Source: Klebsormidium nitens (taxonomy: Eukaryota > Plantae > Klebsormidiophyceae). Taken from it: 64,000 nucleotides of DNA. Below the pieces are notes generated by a model. The model saw only the letters and a list, made by a program, of their open reading frames with translations, was not told where the DNA came from and searched no databases. The stretch covers positions 100-64,099 of the forward strand of contig DF237476.1 of NCBI GenBank assembly GCA_000708835.1, written 5' to 3'. How positions within the stretch are numbered: position 1 is the stretch's first letter; each line of letters opens with the position of its first letter. Below are positions 14,621-49,591 of the stretch, one piece after another. A program made the position numbers and the translations under genes.

Positions 14621-17028
14621 GCTGCTCGCCTCCAGACAATTTGCTGACTCTGTGATACGAACAAATCCTAGTTCGATTACCTTGAAGGTTGCGTGCATTA
14701 GGAGAGACGCATTGAACTTGTATGAGATGAGTGGTTTCAAGGGTTTATGCAGCGGAGCAGCCGGGTTTCTGCACAAAGCAAACAAATGCACGTCCTTTCC
14801 AAAAATCAAAACAAAGACTTCTGAGACCACGTTGGGTTAGCTCCTTTCAATGCAAGCCTGGCAAGGATGACGAGGGGCCAGAGATGACACCTGGAAAACC
14901 TGTTTTATTAAAGGTGGCTCGACTCAAAAAGGTGGAATCCATATGAGAGATTGTTAGGTACAATCAGAACACCGCTTCGATGTACGACAGGGACACTGGA
15001 AAACGCGATTGGTAGTCTCATGAGATTCCACGTGGTTGATTATGGAAAGGTAGGTACCTTGTGGCGGTTGTAGAAACCAGCCCGCGGTTCAAAAACTTCT
15101 TCCAACGTTGCTGGTGCTGCCACTACGCATACACAACGATCACATGAAGCCAGATAGCAGAGTCCCCGCTCAAAGATGAGGCCAGATCAGTTGTGAAATG
15201 TAGCTTCTCAAACAAGGCTACAAGCCTTCTTCGGAGTCGTCAAACCCAACAAAAGCAACATGAAAGTATAAATCAGCCTAGCTAGCTAGCTGATATTAGC
15301 TGCCAGAGCGCATGCCGCTTGGCAGCGCGGCACGTACCGCGCGCGGCCAACTTCGGGGCGGCCGCTTTAGTTGCGCGCGCGCCCGCCTCATTCGAGAGTC
15401 GAGATTCGAGACTCGAGAAATTTCCCACTCCTACTAGATAGGTAGGCCGGCCAGCTGGCACCAGGCAGTGCCCACGTAACCGTACTGTAACCGACTTTTG
15501 TACGGTTAACGGATTTTTAGGCCCCCCGCGAGACCTGGCAGGCTGGCACGCGGCAGCGTCCCTTGAGCGGATCAAGCTCCGGGCGCCAGCCAAATCATTG
15601 CCCCGCGTGTGATGATGTCAAACTGTCCAAGCCTTGCGCATCTGTCTACCAAATGGACGATCGGACGGCTCTGACACATCGCGGATCACAGAGCTGGCAG
15701 CCATTGTACGGAATGATGCGTCGGAAACGGCGTCGGGACTCGGGAATCGGTCGGCGATCATGCATGCTAGCTATAGGCTTCAGTTCTGTCCGAGCACTGG
15801 CGCATTGCAGTTGAACTCTTTCCAGTCTGTCGAGCGCTGAGCCGCCATGCAAGCCTTGAATCAAGCTCAGCTCTGTTGTGTCAGCGCTTGTCTCCATATT
15901 GCATGGCCGCAAGCGACGCTCGGAGTCGAACTGAGGGAGGCCTCCGGAAGGCTCCACCAGCTTTGTCTCACGAGGCGCTTTGATACTCAAAACCAAGCTC
16001 GTTTTCTCATTTGCATTCGCTGGTTTGATTGGTGATTATGGTGGTCACATTGGCTATCCCTCCCATATGCTGACGCCTGCTCTAGTGCTTGTTACAATCT
16101 GCACCAACTGGCATTCCGTAGACAGCCCACTAGAGCACAAGCTGGCAGGGGAAAATAGTTGCAGAGCAGATTTGCCTTTCCAGTGACATTCACTGGCATA
16201 AAAGACGTGAGTAAGAGGTAGGTGCAAAACATGCAAAGCAACTGCCGAAGTGGAAAATTGTAGGGGAAGTTGTAGACGTTGCATTGAGCTCAGCTGCCTT
16301 ATACTGATGCTGTACTTATTGTCAATTCTTAGGGCTGCAGCTTGTAAGCGAAATACTCTGATGGCAAAACTGGGTGGTGTATCAGCGACCTGTGAGGGAC
16401 TTGATGAATTGTCAGGACATCCTTTGAATGTATCAAAACTCTTTGGTACGGTGTTAGAGGTGGTACGACTTACCAACTAATTAAAGCGAGGCCTGGCTAT
16501 TTGTTGGCTGAAGGCATTGGCACAGTTGGGTGGTGGTTGCTTGGTTGTGAGTTTTCTGTGTTCCTTTTACTGAAAGATTCCAGAATTGCGGGATATCACT
16601 TGTCTGGTGTACCCCGTTCAGTCTAAGAGGCCTGCATGTTAAATCTCTCCACCAAACTATTGCTGAACAGGCACCAAAAGATTGGCTGCCTTACAAATGA
16701 GAGTCAGAAGACAATGCAACCAGCAAAAAGTTAGACAGCTTGCACATGCACAGACTGCCACCAATCTGGCTGTTCAATGAAACTTGAACCCCTGGAAAGC
16801 GTCCTGAGTTTCGATTCAAAGAAAGCTCCTGGCAGCTGACATGCCCACCATAATCGTCCTATTGATTCCAATGACCATCCTGCTGTCAGAAGGTAGTCTG
16901 GCTTGCCTGCCTTACCTACAGTAGGCTTCTGAGAGCTCACCTGATCACCTCTACAGGTCCCAAGTCAGGTCTCGTTTCCTGCAATCCTCTGCAGTCTTGG
17001 TCAATTGTGGTGACATCTTAGTTCCTAG

Positions 17029-17768
17029 TGCAGGTTGTGCTACACCGTGTCCTTATGGCGCCCACACCTGATTCCGTGTCTTCTGAGAAAACGTACCCCG
17101 CCCCCGCGGTATGCGTCGACAGCAAGGGCCGCGACACTCCCTTCACGCCAGTACAAACCTCCGGGCCGTTCTACCCCCTCCATATGAGCCATGAAGACGT
17201 GGACAATGACCTCACCATCACGCACAGAGGCGCCCCGCGCGCGCTCGGCCAAGTGATCTACATCCGGGGACGGGTGACGGACCATGCCGGGCGGCCGGTC
17301 GCGGGCGCGCGGATTGAGGTGTGGCAAGCGTGCGCGAGCGGGAAGTATAATCACCCGGGAGACGACAATCCGCTTCCGTTGGACCCCAATTTCAAGTACT
17401 TTGGCCGTGCGAGCAGCGACGAGCACGGGCGGTACGTGTTCAAGTCCGTCAAGCCGAGCGCGTACGCGCCGAGCCCCGAGGGCGAGTACGGGTACCTTGC
17501 AAAGGACCCCGCGGAGGTGCGTCCCGCGCACGTCCACTTCAAGGTGTACAAGGACGGGTACAAGACGCTGATCACGCAAATGTACTTTGAGGGGGATCCC
17601 TTCCTGAAGACGGACCGGATCGTGCAGGCGCTGGCCCCCGAGAAGAGAGGGCTGGTCATCATTGCGGCGGAGTGGCCGCAGCCGCAGGACGAGCCGGCGT
17701 CACACAGCTACGCGTTCAACATCGTGATGGAGCAGCAAGACATGCCGGACGGCGCGGCCGGGGCGTGA
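17029..17768 (+). CDS. Intradiol ring-cleavage dioxygenase (protocatechuate 3,4-dioxygenase beta / PcaH-like); 5' end uncertain
   Basis: Uninterrupted coding block with 'TSGPFYP', 'DNDLT', 'GRVTD..GRPVAGARIEVWQACASGKYNHP', 'KPSAY', 'RPAHVHF', 'LITQMYFEGDP'. The two Tyr and two His Fe(III) ligands and the Arg are present. In-frame ATG at 17055; candidate acceptors end at 17028 and 17033; stop at 17766-17768. Confidence 0.92.
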
Positions 17769-41709: not shown

Positions 41710-44571
41710 ATGGAGGGCAGATGGAGTGACATTGCACGCTCACGCTACGCACCTGGAGCGGCTGACAACTGGGCTCTCAGGCCAAGTCACTACTGGAAAG
41801 AGGCCATGTCAATTCCCTGGGTAGCAAAGCATACGCTTCTGATCGCACGCTTGGTTGCAGTGCAAACTCATCATCCTCACCAGCCCCATCAAAACTTCCA
41901 GCAGAATGCCACTCGCGAGGTTCGCAATCATGGTCATGGCCCATTTCAAGCACTTGCTGTTCAGGCGGCTGAGGCTGCTGCTGGCTTTTCAAAGCTTCCT
42001 TGGGCAGAGATGAGCAGTGTCAAGAAAGGGGTGTCAGCGGCCCTGGCATGTCTGGCAGTGGTTGTTCCGATGGGAGATCTGAGGTAAGGCAGACAGCTTC
42101 CAGAACATTTACTAGATCCGCAGATCTCTGCGATATGTGTATCGTCCAGTCTTGCAGCACATCAGACCGAGGCTACATTACAGTGCAATCTGTACTACTC
42201 CCTGCAATTGCAACCCATTGAAATGTATCTTCTGCTGTCAATTATTGCTGTGAACAACGGTGTTGAAAAGGCAGCTTTGAAGGCTGAACTCAGTCATGCC
42301 CTTTTGTTCTGTAGCAGTATATCTCATTAGCTTTGGGTCTCTGAGGGAATTGTTTTTCTATTTATGTGCAGGGTTTTGGAAAGTGACGTCCAGGAGGCTC
42401 TCAGTTGTCTCGCCTCAGAAAAGGGCCTGACAGCTACGGCAGAGGGAAAAGTGGTCGAGCCAATGACAAAGCTTGAGTTTGAGTCTGTTATTTGCGATGG
42501 GAGTGGTGCCGACTGCAAGGTGAGTTTTCAGTGGTCACTCCTCATACGTGCGATCAGGTTCTCCTGCTATATTCCAGCCGGTCATTGCAAGTCCGCTTGA
42601 ATCTTTCTTAGGGTGTTGAACTCTTCTGTTCCAACTCCTATGACGGGGTGTAAGTATCTAACAGATTCCTTGTTTTTGCAGATATTGCTTGGAGTCGGCC
42701 ATCGCAGCAAGAGTCTCCTGAGGATGAAGAACCTGAGGATATATGCATTTGGCTTATGTAAGTCAGCTGATCCTTGATGATGACCTGCTTCTGAAAATGA
42801 TGATCTTCTGATCAGCAGAGGCGTGTGCTTAATCTGATGGAAAACCGTAGCTTGAGATTGATCCTCTCCCAGCCTTATAGATAGCCTTTATTAAATTGGC
42901 CACACTTCTGAAGCCTGCTTCGAAGCCGGAACCTGGACCTGTTGCTGTTTCGATGAAAATAACCTTAGTAAGATTTCAAGTTTGATTTCACTCGTGCTCT
43001 TTCGTCGTTCGTCAACTTGGGACATAGATTGTCAAGTGTATCTGACATGCCGGTCTGCCCATGCAGATGCTGACCCAAACCTGATCCGCTCTCAATTTGG
43101 TTCCAAGTATAAGGGAGTATCTCCAGAGGACTTGAGGAACAACCCGCAATTCTACCAAGATGTGTTGACGTAAGTCCTGCATCTTCGGGACCTTCGCAAC
43201 TCAAGAAGCCTTCTGTCCATCTTCAGATATTTGATTTTCTGCTTTCTGTTTTCACTGTTCCTGACAATCTTGATGTGTCAACCAGGCACTTTGCTACTCC
43301 GTCCAATGCTTGGGTCTGGCTGTGGTCGACCTAGACAGCACTGGGGGATTGGATTGTCAGGATGCGTCCCCTCTCTACTTGAAACCAACGTCTGCAATAC
43401 TGTGCCAGAGGCGAAGAGAGTGCGTTGATGTTTCTCTTCCTCCTGTTGTCGCACCTGCAGGCACGAGTGCGATCTGACCGTTCGGTTGATCGTGCACTTC
43501 AAGGGCTTGACCATGGACAAAGTGAAGGAGGCGTTCGAAGGCTCTTTGAAGAGGCGCCTTTTCAAGGTCAGAGCAACCCGTCTGAATACTTGCACGTCAT
43601 GATGAACCAGGCTGAGCCAGACTGGTTTTGTTGCACCACCTCGTCTCTGTCTGTGCAATCGAGAGAGCGCTGATCAGCTCATCTGTTTTTGAGTACTGTT
43701 AGCCTCAAGATTCACCTGCTCCTGGTCTAATGTGATTGTCTTTTGTTGCAGATTACTGGCCGGGAGGATCATGAAGAGTTGGTCAAGTTCTCAAGTTACT
43801 TCAACAAGCCCATGAAAATCAAGAGGGTGAGCTCGTTCTCTTCCTGCAATTGTTAAACAATATTCGTGAAGGCTTTTTTTTTCCTTACGCTGCTCTGTAT
43901 GGTTTCCTACAGTTCGATGGTGCTGGAAAGCCGGTGTTGATTGTTTGTTACTCTTATTGATGGTGAGCTGGCTCTCAGCAACTTTGGTCATTCTGATGGA
44001 GTAGACTTTGACATGTCCGTCCACATGCCCGTTCAGGGAACAACGATCGACTTTCGATGGCATCCTGGGGGCAAGCTCTCCACCAGAAGTGAGTCTTGCT
44101 TGCGTCCTTCACGCTCGTTAATATTGTGGCTACAACCTTCATAACGTAAGCGGGATTAGCCGGATCTGCACTGAGGGATCTCTTGGAACCGCTGTGCATC
44201 GTTGGTCTTCGTATCAGAACGAAGACCCGGACGGAATGTCTCTTGATGCACCGCTGTCATTCAGTGCAAGCGTACACAGGAGACGTGTTTTCACCTCCTG
44301 TTGACTGCGCTGGTTCTCAATTGGCTGAACGACAGCTTTGTTCTGCAACAGGTTTCAAATTATGCTACATGCATCCAGAGTCCTCTGATCATTAGGGCTC
44401 TCTTCAACAACCTCTTTTGTGATGCTTGCAGTTGCAGGGAAACAGATTGGCGTCATCGAGAGTGGGGTGTTCTGCAAGGCTTTCTTTGATATGTACGTAG
44501 GAGATCCGCCTGTGCTGCAGTCCGCAAAGGAGGAATTTGGTGCCAATCTAGCTCGAGTTCTGTCTTGTTAA
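41710..44571 (+). CDS. Chalcone-isomerase-fold fatty-acid-binding protein (FAP family) with long N-terminal extension; start uncertain
   Basis: Exons: ~41710-42083, 42372-42519, 42682-42757, 43067-43169, 43461-43566, 43752-43826, 44037-44088, 44432-44571; phases consistent. Motifs: 'LLGVGHRSK', 'IYAFGLY', 'LTVRLIV', 'AFEGSL..R', 'GTTIDF', 'FCKAFFDMYVGDPPV..AKEEFG'. Confidence 0.88.
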
Positions 44572-45678
44572 CGATGCAAGTTTACTGCCACCAAGGAGCG
44601 CCTTCTGGTAGTACGGTTTACCCTCGAGTACATATTGCAAGAGCGCGGATCTTAAGGAACGACAATGCGAGAGCGCAGGCCGGATCAGATATCACAGAGA
44701 TTTTGGCAAACGGGCAGAGAAGCTCGTCAGGGGCGGCACCGACGCAAGCGTTCCAAGCTGTACATTGAACAATGTTCTGCGCAGCAGAAGTCCATGCATT
44801 CAACCCCACAAGCAACCTATGGTGGGTATCGGCGGTCTCGATCGCGCGACGATCCGGTCACAAATTTGAATCACCGGTGTGTCGCGTCGCGACAATTACT
44901 GTACGCGGTACTGACGACCGTGCAGACCGGTACTTGAGAATCCGGTCCGAGTTCATAAATTAGAATCTGTCTGACATTCCGATCGTCAGAAACTTCCGGA
45001 GTTTCCGGCGGTACGGTACCGATCAAGTCTGACCGTACGTGAAATTTGAAAATCATGGTTTCGATCGGAAGTTCCGACTCGAACCACCCTAGAGTACCGC
45101 GGTACCTAACTTGAAAGGAGAGTGCAGAAGATGGAAACGGGAGTGTAGGGAATGGCGCTTTTTAGAAGCAAGCAATGGCGGCCAACTTTGCAGCCACGAT
45201 GGTGCTTCTTCCGATTTGTCCTCAACATAACAAGATGTTGGAGCTTCGAAGGAGCCTTCATGACGCTCTCCCAACATTTTTTTCTGCTTGTCAGAGGTTT
45301 TTATAAGCTGCATATGGCTCTTCTTTGCGTGCCAATTTGATGCTCCTCTCAAAGTGTAAAACCTGACACTGTCTAAGAATCTCCTCACACTTACTTACGG
45401 CCCGGCAAAATTTTTCTGAGTATTTGTACCGCCCGAGTAACATAAACCTGAGTAGCCGTGACGCGAACCGCCGGTAACACTGACGATATTCGATACGCGC
45501 TAAATCGATTTTGTGGCGGCCGGAGTCGGAATCGACTCGGCCGGTACCCACCATAGGTAGCTTGTGCCTAAGGTTTCTCGATATATCCACGATTATTCCA
45601 TGTACTCCGGGCAGCAGCAACTGACAAAAGAGAGAGACTTTTGGAGAAAGTCCAGTTTGACAGAGCGCAATGGACGTG

Positions 45679-45727
45679 CCTCTTCTAAGGGACGCTAAGT
45701 CAATCCTCTTCTAAGGGACGCTAAGTC
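45679..45727 (+). repeat. Tandem duplication, 23-bp unit, 26-bp period
   Basis: cctcttctaagggacgctaagtc at 45679-45701 and 45705-45727. Confidence 0.95.
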
Positions 45728-46990
45728 GATCAATTGGTCCCATCCGGCGTTCAAATGGATGCATGATTGGATCACTTCGGAATAAAAGTTCTTCTTATTT
45801 TGATCATCATCCGTGTTGAGTTCGCATCATTGGCAGATCGACATGCATGCATGTTTACGATCTGATAAAATGGTTACTCGAGTCAATTAAGTTATTATGA
45901 TAGTGACTTGGGCCCGTACAGGGAGATCCGGCATATGCATACAGCATGAAATGAGCGCCGCCCGCGTGGGAATGCTAGCTGCGGCCTGCATGGCGGCAGC
46001 GGCTCGAGCCCTTCAGCTAATTACTCTCAGTCTGGCCACCCCATCAGTGTGAGATATGTATTGAGTGGAATCCATATGCATATGCTCAGGCTGCACGCCA
46101 CGCGTTAAGCATTAGTATGTACTCTATATGTATACTAGGAATTCAATTGGTATAAAGGACATATTGGAGGAGCCCAGTTTTTGAGTTAAATCGGGCTTTC
46201 AATCAAATATTGAAAGCCGAATAACAGAGTCATGTGCATGAGGACAAGACGGTTGGACTTGATCAAAGTAATGCCGTTAAGTTCGCACTTATAAGCTAAA
46301 AGTTCAGCTTGAGATCTCCATATGGCCTACAGAGTATAGAACTCACTACCGTCGCTATACAAGACTTAGTAGATGGATGCATGTTTCCTGGCTGCGAAGC
46401 AGTGGCTTTCGGAGAACACACGCAAAGTTGGCCATCGACTTCAGAGGCACGGTCGGCTTGCCAAGGCACTTGCTCTAGTCGATATCATCGGGAGTTACTG
46501 TGCCTTCGGACGAGTCAAACAATGCGGACCATGCATATTCGTCAAGTATGCGGTAGTAACTCGAGACGCCCCAGGAAATGAGACTCGTAGGATTCAGTAA
46601 GAAATAAAGCGTGTCAATGTTCCTTATTCGGCAAGCAGATCCGTGCCTTGAATCGTTTCTATATTTGGGACCTGTCGCCTAAGCTTGTTCGCCCCCCCGT
46701 TATTACCAGAGCAAAAGTAAAGCACCCCTCTTGGTTGTCAAAGTCGATTCCTGTTGTAACAATGTACGCCGATCCCCCCTTGTGTCGGCCGTTTCTTCGT
46801 TGAACAAAACACAGGATGGCAACCCAAAGCTTCGCTTCACCTCCGAAAGGTTGACCATAGTACAGCCTATTGAACCTCCTGGCTACCAAATGTATTCATT
46901 CCATGCTCACCAAACCTCCTTCCAATCCTCTCTGACCTTCCAATTCTGTCCCACAAGAATCCACAACAATTGATCGAGCTCACCGTTGCA

Positions 46991-49591
46991 TCACAACCCA
47001 ACATTCTTCTGCGTCTTCTGGATCTGGTTGAGGAAGAGCCAGGTGAACTGCAGAAAACCAAGAATTGTCGCGTCAGACGACAGCAACAGCAATCAGCAAA
47101 AACCAGAGACTCACTATAAGCAATTAATGCAGCATACACTGGTGCCAGACTCACAAAACACAATTGCGCTTGGTACTTTTACAGGCGATGCAAAGATGAG
47201 ACTCGGACAGTAGGCGATTGGGTCCTTTTGGGACATTCAAGCCTTTGCCATGACAGGATCGACTTCTTTCTTCCCAGAACATATGAGCCTTCTGCATCAA
47301 TGTTTCCAAGCCAGTAACACCACACTCACCATCACATGCGGCGCTATCCGCACAACGTAGGTGGGGAACCCAGAGTACAACTTCAGAGGACCATATTGCC
47401 GAATCGTCTTGACGGCACAGTCCAACGAACCCGCAAAGGGCAGCTTCCCGTCAGGCCCTGGCTGCTGCTTCTGGATCTGGGTCTTCACGTAGTCGAAGGG
47501 CAGACTGCAGGCGGCGGCAAAGAAGCCGGAGATGGCGCTGGCACCTGCAAACAGGCAGGTTCCAGATGGCTTATCCACATGGTAAGACCTCCTTCTTAGC
47601 TGCTTTTCCCCCTGGCTGCCAGAGCTGGCTGCTTTTAGGATGTTGTATACAGAAGTTGTTGACAGAATCGCTATCCCACCAGTTGAAATCGTCTGAGTCT
47701 GCCTACACTCCCGCCTTCCCTACAAATGCTACACGTTTCCCGATACAGCATGATACCCACCGCCGTAAGATGGAGTGCCGGACTCTCTTGCCAATAACAA
47801 AGATTTCACCAACTTATATGCCACCGACTTGTCACTTGTCCCGCAGACTGAAGGATGACCGTTTTTTCATTGGGGGTAAACTCCGCCTATCTTCTGGATA
47901 TCTGTTTTAACCATTTCGTGAAGAGAACAGCGAGCCCCAAAACAACAAAGCCCTCTCAAGGTCAAGATCCAAGCGGTCAACTCCGGCATGCGCACCTTTA
48001 TCTGAGAGAAGCTGCAGCAGAGAGGATGGTGGCTCACCCAAGACGGTTTGAATTTCAGACAAGCCTTGGCTTTTGAGACTCTCAGCGGCTTGATCGTATG
48101 AAGCGAGCATCCCCATGTTGAGTGCCATGGCCCTGACGACGGTCGGCCCGGCTCCCCTCCAAAGAGCCAACACCCCTTCGTCCTTTGTGATCCTCGATAG
48201 GGCATGGAAGGCATTCTTGTAGTTTCTCCGTTGCTCAAGAGGAAGAGTGGAATCGGCTTGCATCCGAATAAGAGCGAGATCGGCGGGGCTTCCGACACAT
48301 GCCCCGATGGCACCAGCGCTCAGCCCGCACAGCGCCTTCTGATACAGAGGGAGGGGCTTGCCGTCGTTTGCAGCCTGGGCTTTTGTGGTCAGAATCCTGC
48401 AACCGAACAGCGCCTCCATCAGCACAAACCCTCCTGAATGCAGCTGCTCAAGCAGAAGACTCTACATGTGATGAAGTCCTGTCAACGGGACAAAGTCAGA
48501 GTCTACTCATACAGCCAACTATCCAACAATGCGATTGAAGCAGTGTCGGGTGCCCGGAGAAAACAGCTGACACAGATTCATACCTGAATGATCCAAGCCT
48601 GGCGGTCGTATAGGTGGCCTGTCTGAGAAGTCCGGCAGAGAGACCCTGCAAATAGCACCAAGAAAACCTTCATGATTGGAGGGAAAGGACAATCTGCAGT
48701 CTACTCGTCCACTTTTGTGATGCCCGATGTTTAGCGCAATTCTCATTTGCAACAAATGCAACTTTTTGAACTGGACTTGCATGCACTCGTCAATAAGCAT
48801 TTTGGAGTGGCGCTGGCAGCCATCCGTACCTTGTACATGGCTCCAAATCCTTCCTTAGCAATAATACTTTTCGCCACTTGAACAGGGCCTCCTCCATCCA
48901 ACTGAATCCGGACCTGTCCACACATGTCAAGCAAGCAATGCACAGTGAGCACTGATTTGCTCTTATTCAAGTTTTCTTGTCAATCAATCACCTTGTAGAA
49001 ATAACCAAACCCTTCTTTGGCCATGATCTCCTTCGCTACACCAATGGGGCCTCCACCGGTGAGTTGAATTCGCACCTGCAAAGAGCCAGGTTCAAACACC
49101 ATAGATAGTCAGGGGACGTAATGGCATAAATGAGCTTTCTTGACGAGATACCGAGTGCAAATTCTGGAGGCAGAGCCGGAAACTCATCCAGATGATCGTC
49201 ATCCTAATGTGAACAATCTGCAATTTTGAGATCTGTGCACCATAATGTGATGAGAAAATTGGATTACGTTGCGTTTAAGTTACAAGACCAACAAGATGAA
49301 AGCAATCGACCTGGGCATCCATCACTTGCGGGGGGAATGTCGAGTAGGCATTTCTGAGATCCAGGAAGAAGGCCGTCTGAGCAAGTGCTCATATCAACTC
49401 TGCTACAAGAACGGTCAGATCTCTAGCAACTTGGATCATTACCAGCAAGACAAAGGAACACGTACCTTGACCATGTCAATTGGCTGAATGACACATGTGG
49501 CTGCCATCCCTGACAAGCCTCCATTGAGAAACGGCTTCACTGTTGTCCAAAGAGGTGACAATGCTGGTTTCGGTTTGCTGTCTGTAGCCAT
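46991..49591 (-). CDS. DTC: Mitochondrial dicarboxylate/tricarboxylate carrier, ~300 aa, with duplicated alternative exon 2
   Basis: Exons: 49466-49591, [48992-49075 or 48830-48913], 48584-48645, 48038-48396, 47330-47544, 46991-47047 (903 nt with one exon 2). Three carrier signatures: PIDMVKVR, PADLALIR, PFDYVKTQ. Also 'GLSAGLLRQATYTTARLG', 'RAMALNMGMLA', 'RIAPHVM'. Confidence 0.96.

What the first reader, a model, noticed from the sequence alone, without database searches (positions are those of the whole stretch)
48830..49075. Tandem-duplicated, probably mutually exclusive exons in the mitochondrial DTC carrier
Seen in sequence: between exon 1 (ending PIDMVK) and exon 3 (GLSAGLLRQ) lie two 84-nt phase-0 exons, each with an AG acceptor and GT donor. 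2a (48992-49075) encodes VRIQLTGGGPIGVAKEIMAKEGFGYFYK and 2b (48830-48913) encodes VRIQLDGGGPVQVAKSIIAKEGFGAMYK. They are 21/28 aa identical while many synonymous positions differ (GTG/GTC, CGA/CGG, CAA/CAG, CTC/TTG), which suggests selection on both. The intron between them is only 78 nt, the shortest I found in the window, and a candidate branch point (CTCAC) lies ~46 nt from the upstream donor, close enough for steric exclusion. Established knowledge: one copy gives a normal ~300-aa carrier, both copies would duplicate the first matrix loop/helix, and homologous mutually exclusive exons are considered rare in plants. Inference: two DTC isoforms differing in the matrix-side segment after signature motif 1, possibly in regulation or transport properties.
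Basis: partly seen in the sequence, partly recalled or inferred. Interest (0 to 1): 0.88.

Follow-up and report, generated by a model that had tools for sequence, protein, structure and literature searches.

The report
Mutually exclusive exons in algal DTC carrier
A mitochondrial organic-acid carrier gene of the alga Klebsormidium nitens has two tandem copies of one 84-base exon, and RNA data show that transcripts carry one copy or the other, giving two protein isoforms of which only one is in the public annotation.

Summary
The gene lies on the minus strand and is the Klebsormidium nitens DTC/2-oxoglutarate-type mitochondrial carrier (GAQ89476.1). That annotation is exactly the exon-2a isoform; no 2b isoform is annotated.

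Exons 2a (48992-49075) and 2b (48830-48913) are both 84 nt, phase 0 and AG/GT-flanked. They are 21/28 aa and 54/84 nt identical.

All four RNA runs laid on the gene show E1-2a-E3. One run also holds an E1-2b-E3 contig at about 35% of the bubble depth. No 2a-2b or E1-E3 joint was seen.

A related Klebsormidium genome keeps both exons intact (dN/dS 0 for 2a, 0.07 for 2b) with a 75-nt intron between them. Three independent full-length spliced mRNA contigs of a close relative carry 2b only.

Chara and Closterium have the same exon as a single copy, and the Physcomitrium gene has no introns, so the duplication arose in the Klebsormidium lineage.

The exon encodes the end of helix 1, the matrix loop and matrix helix h12.

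Steric exclusion is plausible: the short intron is conserved and its branch-point candidate lies 43-46 nt from the 2a donor. It is untested.

This is a new member of a known kind, comparable to SLC25A3 exons 3A/3B and Volvox cyn23. The scan also noted this same stretch in an overlapping window.

The parts
49466..49591 (-). Exon 1, coding part (ATG at 49591; 42 codons ending PIDMVK, the PX[DE]XX[KR] signature of carrier repeat 1). The 5'UTR extends to about 49750.
   Evidence: Joints 49464/49073 and 49464/48911. Pfam Mito_carr hit.
48992..49075 (-). Exon 2a, 84 nt, phase 0. It is the default alternative exon and the one in the public annotation.
   Evidence: E1-2a and 2a-E3 joints in all 4 runs. 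P0271/GAQ89476.1 is identical to the 2a isoform. It is 28/28 aa identical in relative L002, with 10 synonymous and 0 nonsynonymous changes.
48914..48991 (-). 78-nt intron between 2a and 2b. It is 72% identical to the 75-nt intron of the relative, while the flanking introns are 40-44%.
48945..48949 (-). CTCAC branch-point candidate inside the conserved block TCAGTGCTCAC. Its A is 46 nt from the 2a donor and 32 nt from the 2b acceptor (43 and 32 nt in L002).
   Evidence: This is a prediction only; the branch point has not been mapped.
48830..48913 (-). Exon 2b, 84 nt, phase 0. It is the alternative exon, unannotated, and has a weak G-rich acceptor context (tgtgtggacag) that is conserved in the relative.
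   Evidence: E1-2b and 2b-E3 joints on one 136-nt contig of run X9, depth 96 against 178 for 2a. Its orthologue in L002 is intact, with dN/dS 0.07. 2b-only mRNAs L004-L006.
48584..48645 (-). Exon 3 (GLSAGLLRQATYTTARLGSF..), the start of helix 2.
48038..48396 (-). Exon 4 (carrier repeat 2).
   Evidence: Pfam PF00153, E 1e-21.
47330..47544 (-). Exon 5 (carrier repeat 3).
46991..47047 (-). Exon 6, coding part with the TGA stop. The 3'UTR runs to about 46530.

Best explanation
The K. nitens DTC/oxoglutarate-type mitochondrial carrier gene contains a pair of homologous, tandemly duplicated exons, and each mature mRNA carries one of them. The two resulting 300-aa isoforms differ at 7 residues, all in one structural module: the last turn of helix 1 after the signature motif, the matrix loop, matrix helix h12 and the EG...YKG linker. 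Exon 2a is the default in laboratory cultures. Exon 2b reached about a third of transcripts in one run, and it is the only form assembled in three samples of a close relative. The duplication is old, because synonymous sites between the copies are saturated. It is specific to the Klebsormidium lineage, and both copies are kept by purifying selection. Those steps are shown. Two further steps are inferred. First, exclusion is enforced at splicing, most likely by steric hindrance. The only well-placed branch point for the 2b acceptor lies 43-46 nt from the 2a donor in a length- and sequence-conserved 75-78-nt intron, so 2a cannot be joined to 2b. Second, choosing 2b requires skipping 2a, whose acceptor is the stronger. 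The isoforms probably differ in kinetics, lipid interaction or regulation, not in substrate class.
For: Gene model and exon pair. Splice joints: one search shows E1-2a and 2a-E3 in 4 of 4 runs. In run X9 there are paired 136-nt bubble contigs, 2a at depth 178.5 and 2b at 96.3, beside flanks at about 301. Identity: P0271 (GAQ89476.1, K. nitens) is the 2a isoform. Conservation: L002/L003 hold both exons with AG/GT sites and a 75-nt intron. dN/dS is 0 for 2a, 0.07 for 2b and 0.03 for the rest of the CDS; paralogous pS is 0.72-0.80. 2b-only full-length spliced mRNAs occur in three samples. The exon is single-copy with the same boundaries in Chara and Closterium, and the Physcomitrium CDS has no introns. 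Intron identity is 72% against 40-44% for the flanking introns. In the AlphaFold model (pLDDT 77), residues 43-70 cover the end of H1, the loop, h12 and the linker. Co-inclusion stays in frame, so NMD cannot enforce exclusion. All donors are U2-type.
Against: The RNA evidence comes from assembled contigs, which show presence but not absence, so low-level co-inclusion or double skipping is not excluded. Exon 2b was seen in only 1 of 4 K. nitens runs, and the conditions of that run are unknown. The branch point is only predicted. Land-plant spliceosomes are generally held to handle introns of roughly 70-90 nt (from memory, not checked here), and I found no intron-length distribution for K. nitens, so 78 nt may not be too short. 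No functional difference between the isoforms has been measured. No 2a transcript of the relative species was seen, so a species difference cannot be separated from condition-dependent regulation.
Confidence: 0.85

Rival explanations
1. The pair is real and alternative, but exclusion is not steric. It would result from splice-site competition and trans-acting regulators: the strong 2a acceptor against the weak, conserved G-rich 2b acceptor, with a factor binding the conserved intron blocks.
For: The 2b acceptor context tgtgtggacag is poor in pyrimidines yet conserved between species. Usage differs sharply between runs and samples. Introns of about 78 nt are generally considered spliceable in land plants (from memory, not checked here).
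Against: The short intron length is conserved (78 and 75 nt) while all the other introns of the gene are at least 177 nt. The branch-point block is conserved at 43-46 nt from the donor. No 2a-2b joint was seen although both exons are used in X9.
Confidence: 0.3
2. Exon 2b use in K. nitens is splicing noise or a relic. The relative has switched to constitutive 2b and K. nitens to 2a, so this is a difference between species and not regulated isoform switching within one organism.
For: Three of four K. nitens runs show no 2b contig. Only 2b mRNAs were found for the relative, and only 2a proteins for K. nitens and K. subtile.
Against: 2b makes up about 35% of the bubble depth in X9. Exon 2a in the relative's genome is intact, with 10 synonymous and 0 nonsynonymous changes. 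Exon 2b in K. nitens is intact, with dN/dS 0.07. Each species therefore keeps the exon it supposedly does not use.
Confidence: 0.1
3. Exclusion depends on competing RNA structures (docking and selector sites), on U2/U12 splice-site incompatibility, or on NMD of the co-included form.
For: RNAalifold pairs the 2a donor GGUGA with the branch-point block UCACY in both species.
Against: That helix is 5 bp in a weak fold (-14.9 kcal/mol, two sequences only). No complementary 7-mer is shared between the same segments in both species. The 11-nt inverted repeats are not conserved in L002. All donors are GT with U2-type context. 84 nt is a multiple of 3, so co-inclusion creates no premature stop.
Confidence: 0.05

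Closest known systems
SLC25A3 (mitochondrial phosphate carrier) exons 3A/3B in mammals
   Same: Both are mitochondrial carrier family genes with two homologous, tandem, mutually exclusive exons in repeat 1. Both give same-fold isoforms that differ little in sequence, with one broadly expressed form and one regulated form (PMC5740500; PMC13252106).
   Different: It is a different carrier subfamily in a different kingdom, and the duplication was independent. From memory, the SLC25A3 exons are about 41-42 codons and cover mainly helix 1, whereas here 28 codons cover the H1 end, the loop and h12. Its regulation is tissue-specific; here the trigger is unknown.
Volvox carteri cyn23 exons 4/5
   Same: It is a homologous pair of equal-length tandem exons (106 nt) spliced mutually exclusively in a green alga, verified by RT-PCR (PMC4378016).
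   Different: It is a chlorophyte cyclophilin gene. Its 106 nt is not a multiple of 3, so co-inclusion would shift the frame, whereas here co-inclusion stays in frame. No cross-species conservation was shown there as far as I read.
Alpha-tropomyosin exons 2/3, the steric-hindrance class of mutually exclusive exons
   Same: The branch point of the downstream exon lies close to the donor of the upstream exon. The criterion used for human MXEs is under 50 nt (PMC5740500); here it is 43-46 nt.
   Different: The mechanism is proven there, as I recall it. Here it is only predicted, and the minimal donor-to-branch-point spacing for streptophyte spliceosomes is not established.
Land-plant DTC and animal 2-oxoglutarate/malate carrier
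   Same: The protein is 70-78% identical to land-plant proteins named DTC and has three Mito_carr repeats.
   Different: Land-plant, Chara and Closterium genes have one copy of this segment, and the Physcomitrium CDS has no introns. Transport by the Klebsormidium protein has not been tested.

Membership tests
Mitochondrial carrier family (SLC25, Pfam PF00153) | Three tandem Mito_carr repeats of about 100 aa in a protein of about 300 aa | tested here: met
   Pfam hits on exons 1, 4 and 5. 300-aa protein. Six long helices plus three matrix helices in the model. PDB sequence hits to UCP1, UCP2, OGC and AAC.
Mitochondrial carrier family (SLC25, Pfam PF00153) | PX[DE]XX[KR] signature at the end of the odd-numbered helices | tested here: met
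   PIDMVK at the end of exon 1, PADLALIR in repeat 2 and PFDYVK in repeat 3. P37, D39 and K42 are invariant in a 40-sequence alignment.
DTC / 2-oxoglutarate carrier subfamily | Orthology to characterised plant DTC | tested here: met
   The best full-length hits are land-plant proteins named mitochondrial dicarboxylate/tricarboxylate transporter DTC, at 70-78% identity. JGI names relatives solute carrier family 25 oxoglutarate transporter 11.
DTC / 2-oxoglutarate carrier subfamily | Exchange of dicarboxylates and tricarboxylates in reconstituted liposomes | not testable with these tools
   This needs a biochemical assay.
Homologous mutually exclusive exon pair | Adjacent exons of the same length and phase, with sequence homology and their own splice sites | tested here: met
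   84 nt each, phase 0, AG/GT flanked, 75% aa identity.
Homologous mutually exclusive exon pair | Transcripts containing each exon alone | tested here: met
   E1-2a-E3 in 4 runs and E1-2b-E3 in run X9. 2b-only full-length mRNAs in a relative. 2a-only transcripts in K. nitens and K. subtile.
Homologous mutually exclusive exon pair | Absence or rarity of transcripts with both exons or with neither | tested here: inconclusive
   No 2a-2b or E1-E3 joint in the contigs of 4 runs, although species at 1-2% depth (retained introns) were assembled. Contigs cannot prove absence, and raw-read counts were not available.
Homologous mutually exclusive exon pair | Both copies maintained by selection in related species | tested here: met
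   L002/L003 hold both copies intact, with dN/dS 0 and 0.07 at dS 0.7-0.85.
Steric-hindrance class of mutually exclusive exons | Donor-to-branch-point distance too short for spliceosome assembly (under about 50 nt in the animal studies) | tested here: inconclusive
   The predicted CTCAC branch point lies 46 nt (K. nitens) and 43 nt (L002) from the 2a donor, inside a conserved block. The branch point is not mapped, and the spacing limit for this organism is unknown.
U2/U12 incompatibility class | One intron with U12-type and the other with U2-type splice sites | tested here: not met
   The donors are GTACGT, GTGATT and GTACGG, with no ATATCC or GTATCC consensus.
NMD-enforced exclusivity | Exon length not divisible by 3, so co-inclusion shifts the frame | tested here: not met
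   84 nt equals 28 codons. Both the co-included and the double-skipped forms keep the reading frame.
Docking/selector RNA-structure class | Conserved competing intronic base-pairings | tested here: not met
   No complementary 7-mer is shared between the two species in the same segments. The inverted repeats are not conserved. Power is limited, with only two species.

The most novel reading that the evidence does not exclude
The pair is a regulated, environment-responsive isoform switch of the main mitochondrial organic-acid carrier in an early-diverging streptophyte. It would be enforced by a steric-hindrance intron. Exon 2b, which is closer to the family consensus, would be the dominant form in field conditions. 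Exon 2a, a derived module with the unique T48 and Y67, would be the form of culture conditions. The isoforms would differ in kinetics or cardiolipin interaction. This would be a convergent counterpart of SLC25A3-A/B, and one of several such pairs in a genome unusually rich in tandem exon duplications.
Probability: 0.3. Interest if true: 0.72.

Novelty: new member of a known kind. Interest (0 to 1): 0.58.

Why it matters
Well-supported pairs of homologous mutually exclusive exons are few outside animals. This one has several lines of support:

- transcript evidence for both forms
- conservation of both copies in a second species
- a conserved short intron that gives a directly testable mechanism

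It also corrects the public annotation, which lists one isoform only. The exon swaps one defined structural module (matrix loop, helix h12 and the EG...YKG linker) of a carrier central to malate, 2-oxoglutarate and citrate exchange. That offers a natural experiment on what this module contributes to carrier function. It parallels the medically important SLC25A3 3A/3B pair by independent evolution. Because Chara has two DTC genes and Klebsormidium has one gene with two exons, it also bears on how far alternative exons substitute for gene duplication.

Tried and rejected
- **Inverted repeats.** The repeats in the E1-E3 region (48587-48597/49430-49440 and 48786-48796/49137-49147) are not conserved in L002, so I treat them as chance.
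- **Shared pairings.** A search for complementary 7-mers present in both species found none.
- **Conserved fold.** RNAalifold of the short intron with its flanks gave only a weak fold.
- **Other mechanisms.** U12 incompatibility and NMD enforcement are excluded by the sequence itself.
- **Junction peptide search.** A 63-aa E1/2b/E3 query found no short K. nitens fragments.
- **L001.** This DNA contig of another relative starts inside intron 3 and lacks exon 2.
- **Intron-length statistics.** Three look-ups for K. nitens gave nothing usable.
- **Sample accessions.** They occur in no paper in the library.
- **Closterium.** Extra exon-like hits in its DTC locus are degenerate fragments with stops, not a second exon pair.
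- **Papilio.** The OGC isoforms X1/X2 differ in the last repeat, not at this position.
- **Full-length isoform B.** It could not be used as a query because a spliced protein has no reference and I did not type long sequences. I used P0035 (172 aa, region 1-75) and P0388 instead.

Full report
**Observation**

The gene lies on the minus strand. Its coding exons are E1 49591-49466, 2a 49075-48992, 2b 48913-48830, E3 48645-48584, E4 48396-48038, E5 47544-47330 and E6 47047-46991. Both are 84 nt, phase 0, preceded by AG and followed by GT. They share 21/28 residues and 54/84 nucleotides, and 13 of the 21 conserved residues use different synonymous codons. The intron between them is 78 nt; the other introns of the gene are 390, 184, 187, 493 and 282 nt. 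With one of the two exons the CDS is 903 nt (300 aa). Including both (328 aa) or neither (272 aa) also stays in frame. The whole window holds no third copy.

**Identity of the gene**

Exons 1, 4 and 5 match Pfam Mito_carr. The 2a isoform is identical to P0271, which NCBI holds as GAQ89476.1 'Mitochondrial substrate carrier [Klebsormidium nitens]'. So the organism is K. nitens, and the public annotation holds only the 2a form. The nearest full-length relatives are land-plant proteins named mitochondrial dicarboxylate/tricarboxylate transporter DTC, at 70-78% identity. The closest solved structures by sequence are UCP1, UCP2 and the 2-oxoglutarate/malate carrier.

**Transcript evidence**

Twenty RNA runs hold the gene.
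- All four runs show the joints E1-2a (49464/49073) and 2a-E3 (48991/48644), as well as the downstream introns.
- Run X9 also has a 136-nt contig (depth 96.3) that joins E1 to 2b (49464/48911) and 2b to E3 (48829/48644). Beside it is a 136-nt 2a contig (depth 178.5), and the flanking contigs have depth about 301. This is the assembly bubble expected for two alternative exons used at roughly 65:35.
- No run has a 2a-2b joint or an E1-E3 joint.
- In X1 and X5, contigs of retained introns at 1-2% of exon depth were assembled, yet depth over 2b and its flanks is zero. So 2b use there is low.
- Contigs show presence, not absence, so strict exclusivity is not proven.

**Conservation**

P0272 led to two metagenome contigs (L002, L003) from a related Klebsormidium, 82-88% identical in the exons. 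Both exons are present there with AG/GT sites. Exon 2a is 28/28 aa identical to the window's, and 2b is 25/28. The intron between them is 75 nt.

| Comparison | Synonymous changes | Nonsynonymous changes | dS | dN/dS |
|---|---|---|---|---|
| 2a, K. nitens vs L002 | 10 | 0 | 0.85 | 0 |
| 2b, K. nitens vs L002 | 9 | 3 | 0.70 | 0.07 |
| Rest of the CDS, K. nitens vs L004 | - | - | 1.24 | 0.03 |

Between 2a and 2b, synonymous sites are saturated (pS 0.72-0.80) and dN is 0.2-0.26. The duplication is therefore much older than the species split, and there is no sign of gene conversion.

The 90% cluster of P0271 contains P0386 and P0388, which read E1-2b-E3. Their contigs L004, L005 and L006 come from two JGI samples and one SRA run. 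They are full-length, fully spliced mRNAs with UTRs, 97-99% identical to L002 in the exons, and they carry 2b and no 2a. K. subtile (P0387) has the 2a form.

**Age and origin**

In Chara braunii (L008:8612-8695) and Closterium (L009:4297-4380) the homologous 84-nt exon has the same boundaries and is single-copy. The Physcomitrium DTC coding sequence has no introns. So the exon is ancestral in streptophyte algae, and the duplication arose in the Klebsormidium lineage. Against 37 other family members, 2b is closer to the consensus (V53, Q54, I60, A67). Exon 2a carries T48 and Y67, which none of the 37 have. Even so, 2a is the more strictly conserved copy within Klebsormidium.

**What the exon encodes**

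An AlphaFold model built on a 40-sequence alignment (mean pLDDT 77, pTM 0.74) has H1 at residues 13-48, a loop at 49-51, the matrix helix at 52-62, a short helix at 65-69 and H2 from residue 72. Exon 2 (residues 43-70) therefore covers the last turn of H1 directly after the PIDMVK signature, the GGG loop, all of matrix helix h12 and the EG...YKG linker. The seven differences are T48D, I53V, G54Q, E58S, M60I, Y67A and F68M. From established knowledge of carrier structure, this module lies on the matrix face, moves during the transport cycle and contributes to cardiolipin binding. A difference in kinetics, lipid dependence or regulation is therefore the most likely consequence. That is inference only.

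**How exclusion may work**
- NMD cannot enforce exclusion, because co-inclusion stays in frame.
- All donors are U2-type.
- No intronic pairing is conserved.
- The short intron stands out. It is 72% identical between the species, against 40% and 44% for the flanking introns. Its conserved blocks are GTGATT, TCAGTGCTCAC, TTGCTTGC and TGTGTGGACAG, and its length is conserved at 78 and 75 nt.
- CTCAC is the only YTNAY motif at a usual distance from the 2b acceptor (-32). The other introns of the gene have such motifs at -22 to -38. It lies 46 nt (K. nitens) or 43 nt (L002) from the 2a donor.
- The human survey used under 50 nt as its criterion for steric interference (PMC5740500).
- The 2b acceptor is poor in pyrimidines but conserved, while the 2a acceptor is stronger.

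The model that follows: when 2a is recognised, its donor cannot pair with the nearby branch point, so it splices to E3. When 2a is skipped, E1 splices to 2b. I found no intron-length distribution for K. nitens, and the branch point is not mapped, so this remains a hypothesis.

**Comparison with what is known**

Homologous mutually exclusive exons are well known in animals, including the carrier gene SLC25A3 with exons 3A/3B. One pair has been verified in the green alga Volvox (cyn23). Searches combining mutually exclusive exons with Klebsormidium, with mitochondrial carrier and plants, or DTC with alternative splicing found no report of this pair. I file it as a new member of a known kind.

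The scan's first readers flagged this same stretch in an overlapping window. They also flagged tandem-exon candidates in other K. nitens genes. One of those was followed up, and its second copy was found to be mostly unproductive. I did not check these notes. They suggest that a genome-wide survey would be worthwhile.

**Verdict**

Both exons are functional and alternatively used. The exclusion mechanism, the conditions that trigger 2b, and any functional difference between the isoforms remain open. No read-tool refusals occurred.

Noticed in passing
L009:5635-6893 (Closterium sp. NIES-53, GCA_949281275.1): The Closterium DTC locus holds extra high-identity copies of parts of exons (aa 171-206, 208-234, 251-283) inside its introns. 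Some have stops or truncations. They look like degenerate duplicated exon fragments, not functional alternative exons.
   Followed up: partly
P0395 / P0397 (Papilio polytes 2-oxoglutarate/malate carrier isoforms X1/X2): The two annotated isoforms from one contig differ only in the last ~50 residues (third repeat). That suggests alternative homologous 3' exons in an insect member of the same carrier subfamily.
   Followed up: no
window 47048-47329, 47545-48037, 49076-49465: Contigs of retained introns 1, 4 and 5 appear at about 1-2% of exon depth in runs X1 and X5. Nothing covers the 2a-E3 interval (2b and its flanking introns) in those runs.
   Followed up: no
L010:4001-4942 (Physcomitrium patens): The moss DTC coding sequence has no introns, whereas Chara, Closterium and Klebsormidium share at least the exon 1/2/3 boundaries. 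This points to intron loss, possibly by retroposition, on the way to land plants.
   Followed up: no
window 42151-48448 vs L001: L001 (Logan SRR12418002) is a DNA contig of another Klebsormidium relative. It is collinear with the window across the DTC gene and the downstream neighbours, at 77-90% identity.
   Followed up: partly
window 16841-17768: Earlier first-reader notes flag a bacterial-type PcaH-like intradiol dioxygenase here as a horizontal-transfer candidate. I did not examine it.
   Followed up: no
other pieces of the same genome: First readers of the scan noted tandem duplicated, possibly mutually exclusive exons in several other K. nitens genes: a MUT9-like kinase, a MATE transporter, an NHX antiporter, a GH29 fucosidase, an AMBRA1-like gene, an SDR and a Kazal protein. 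If they are real, this genome may be unusually rich in such pairs.
   Followed up: no
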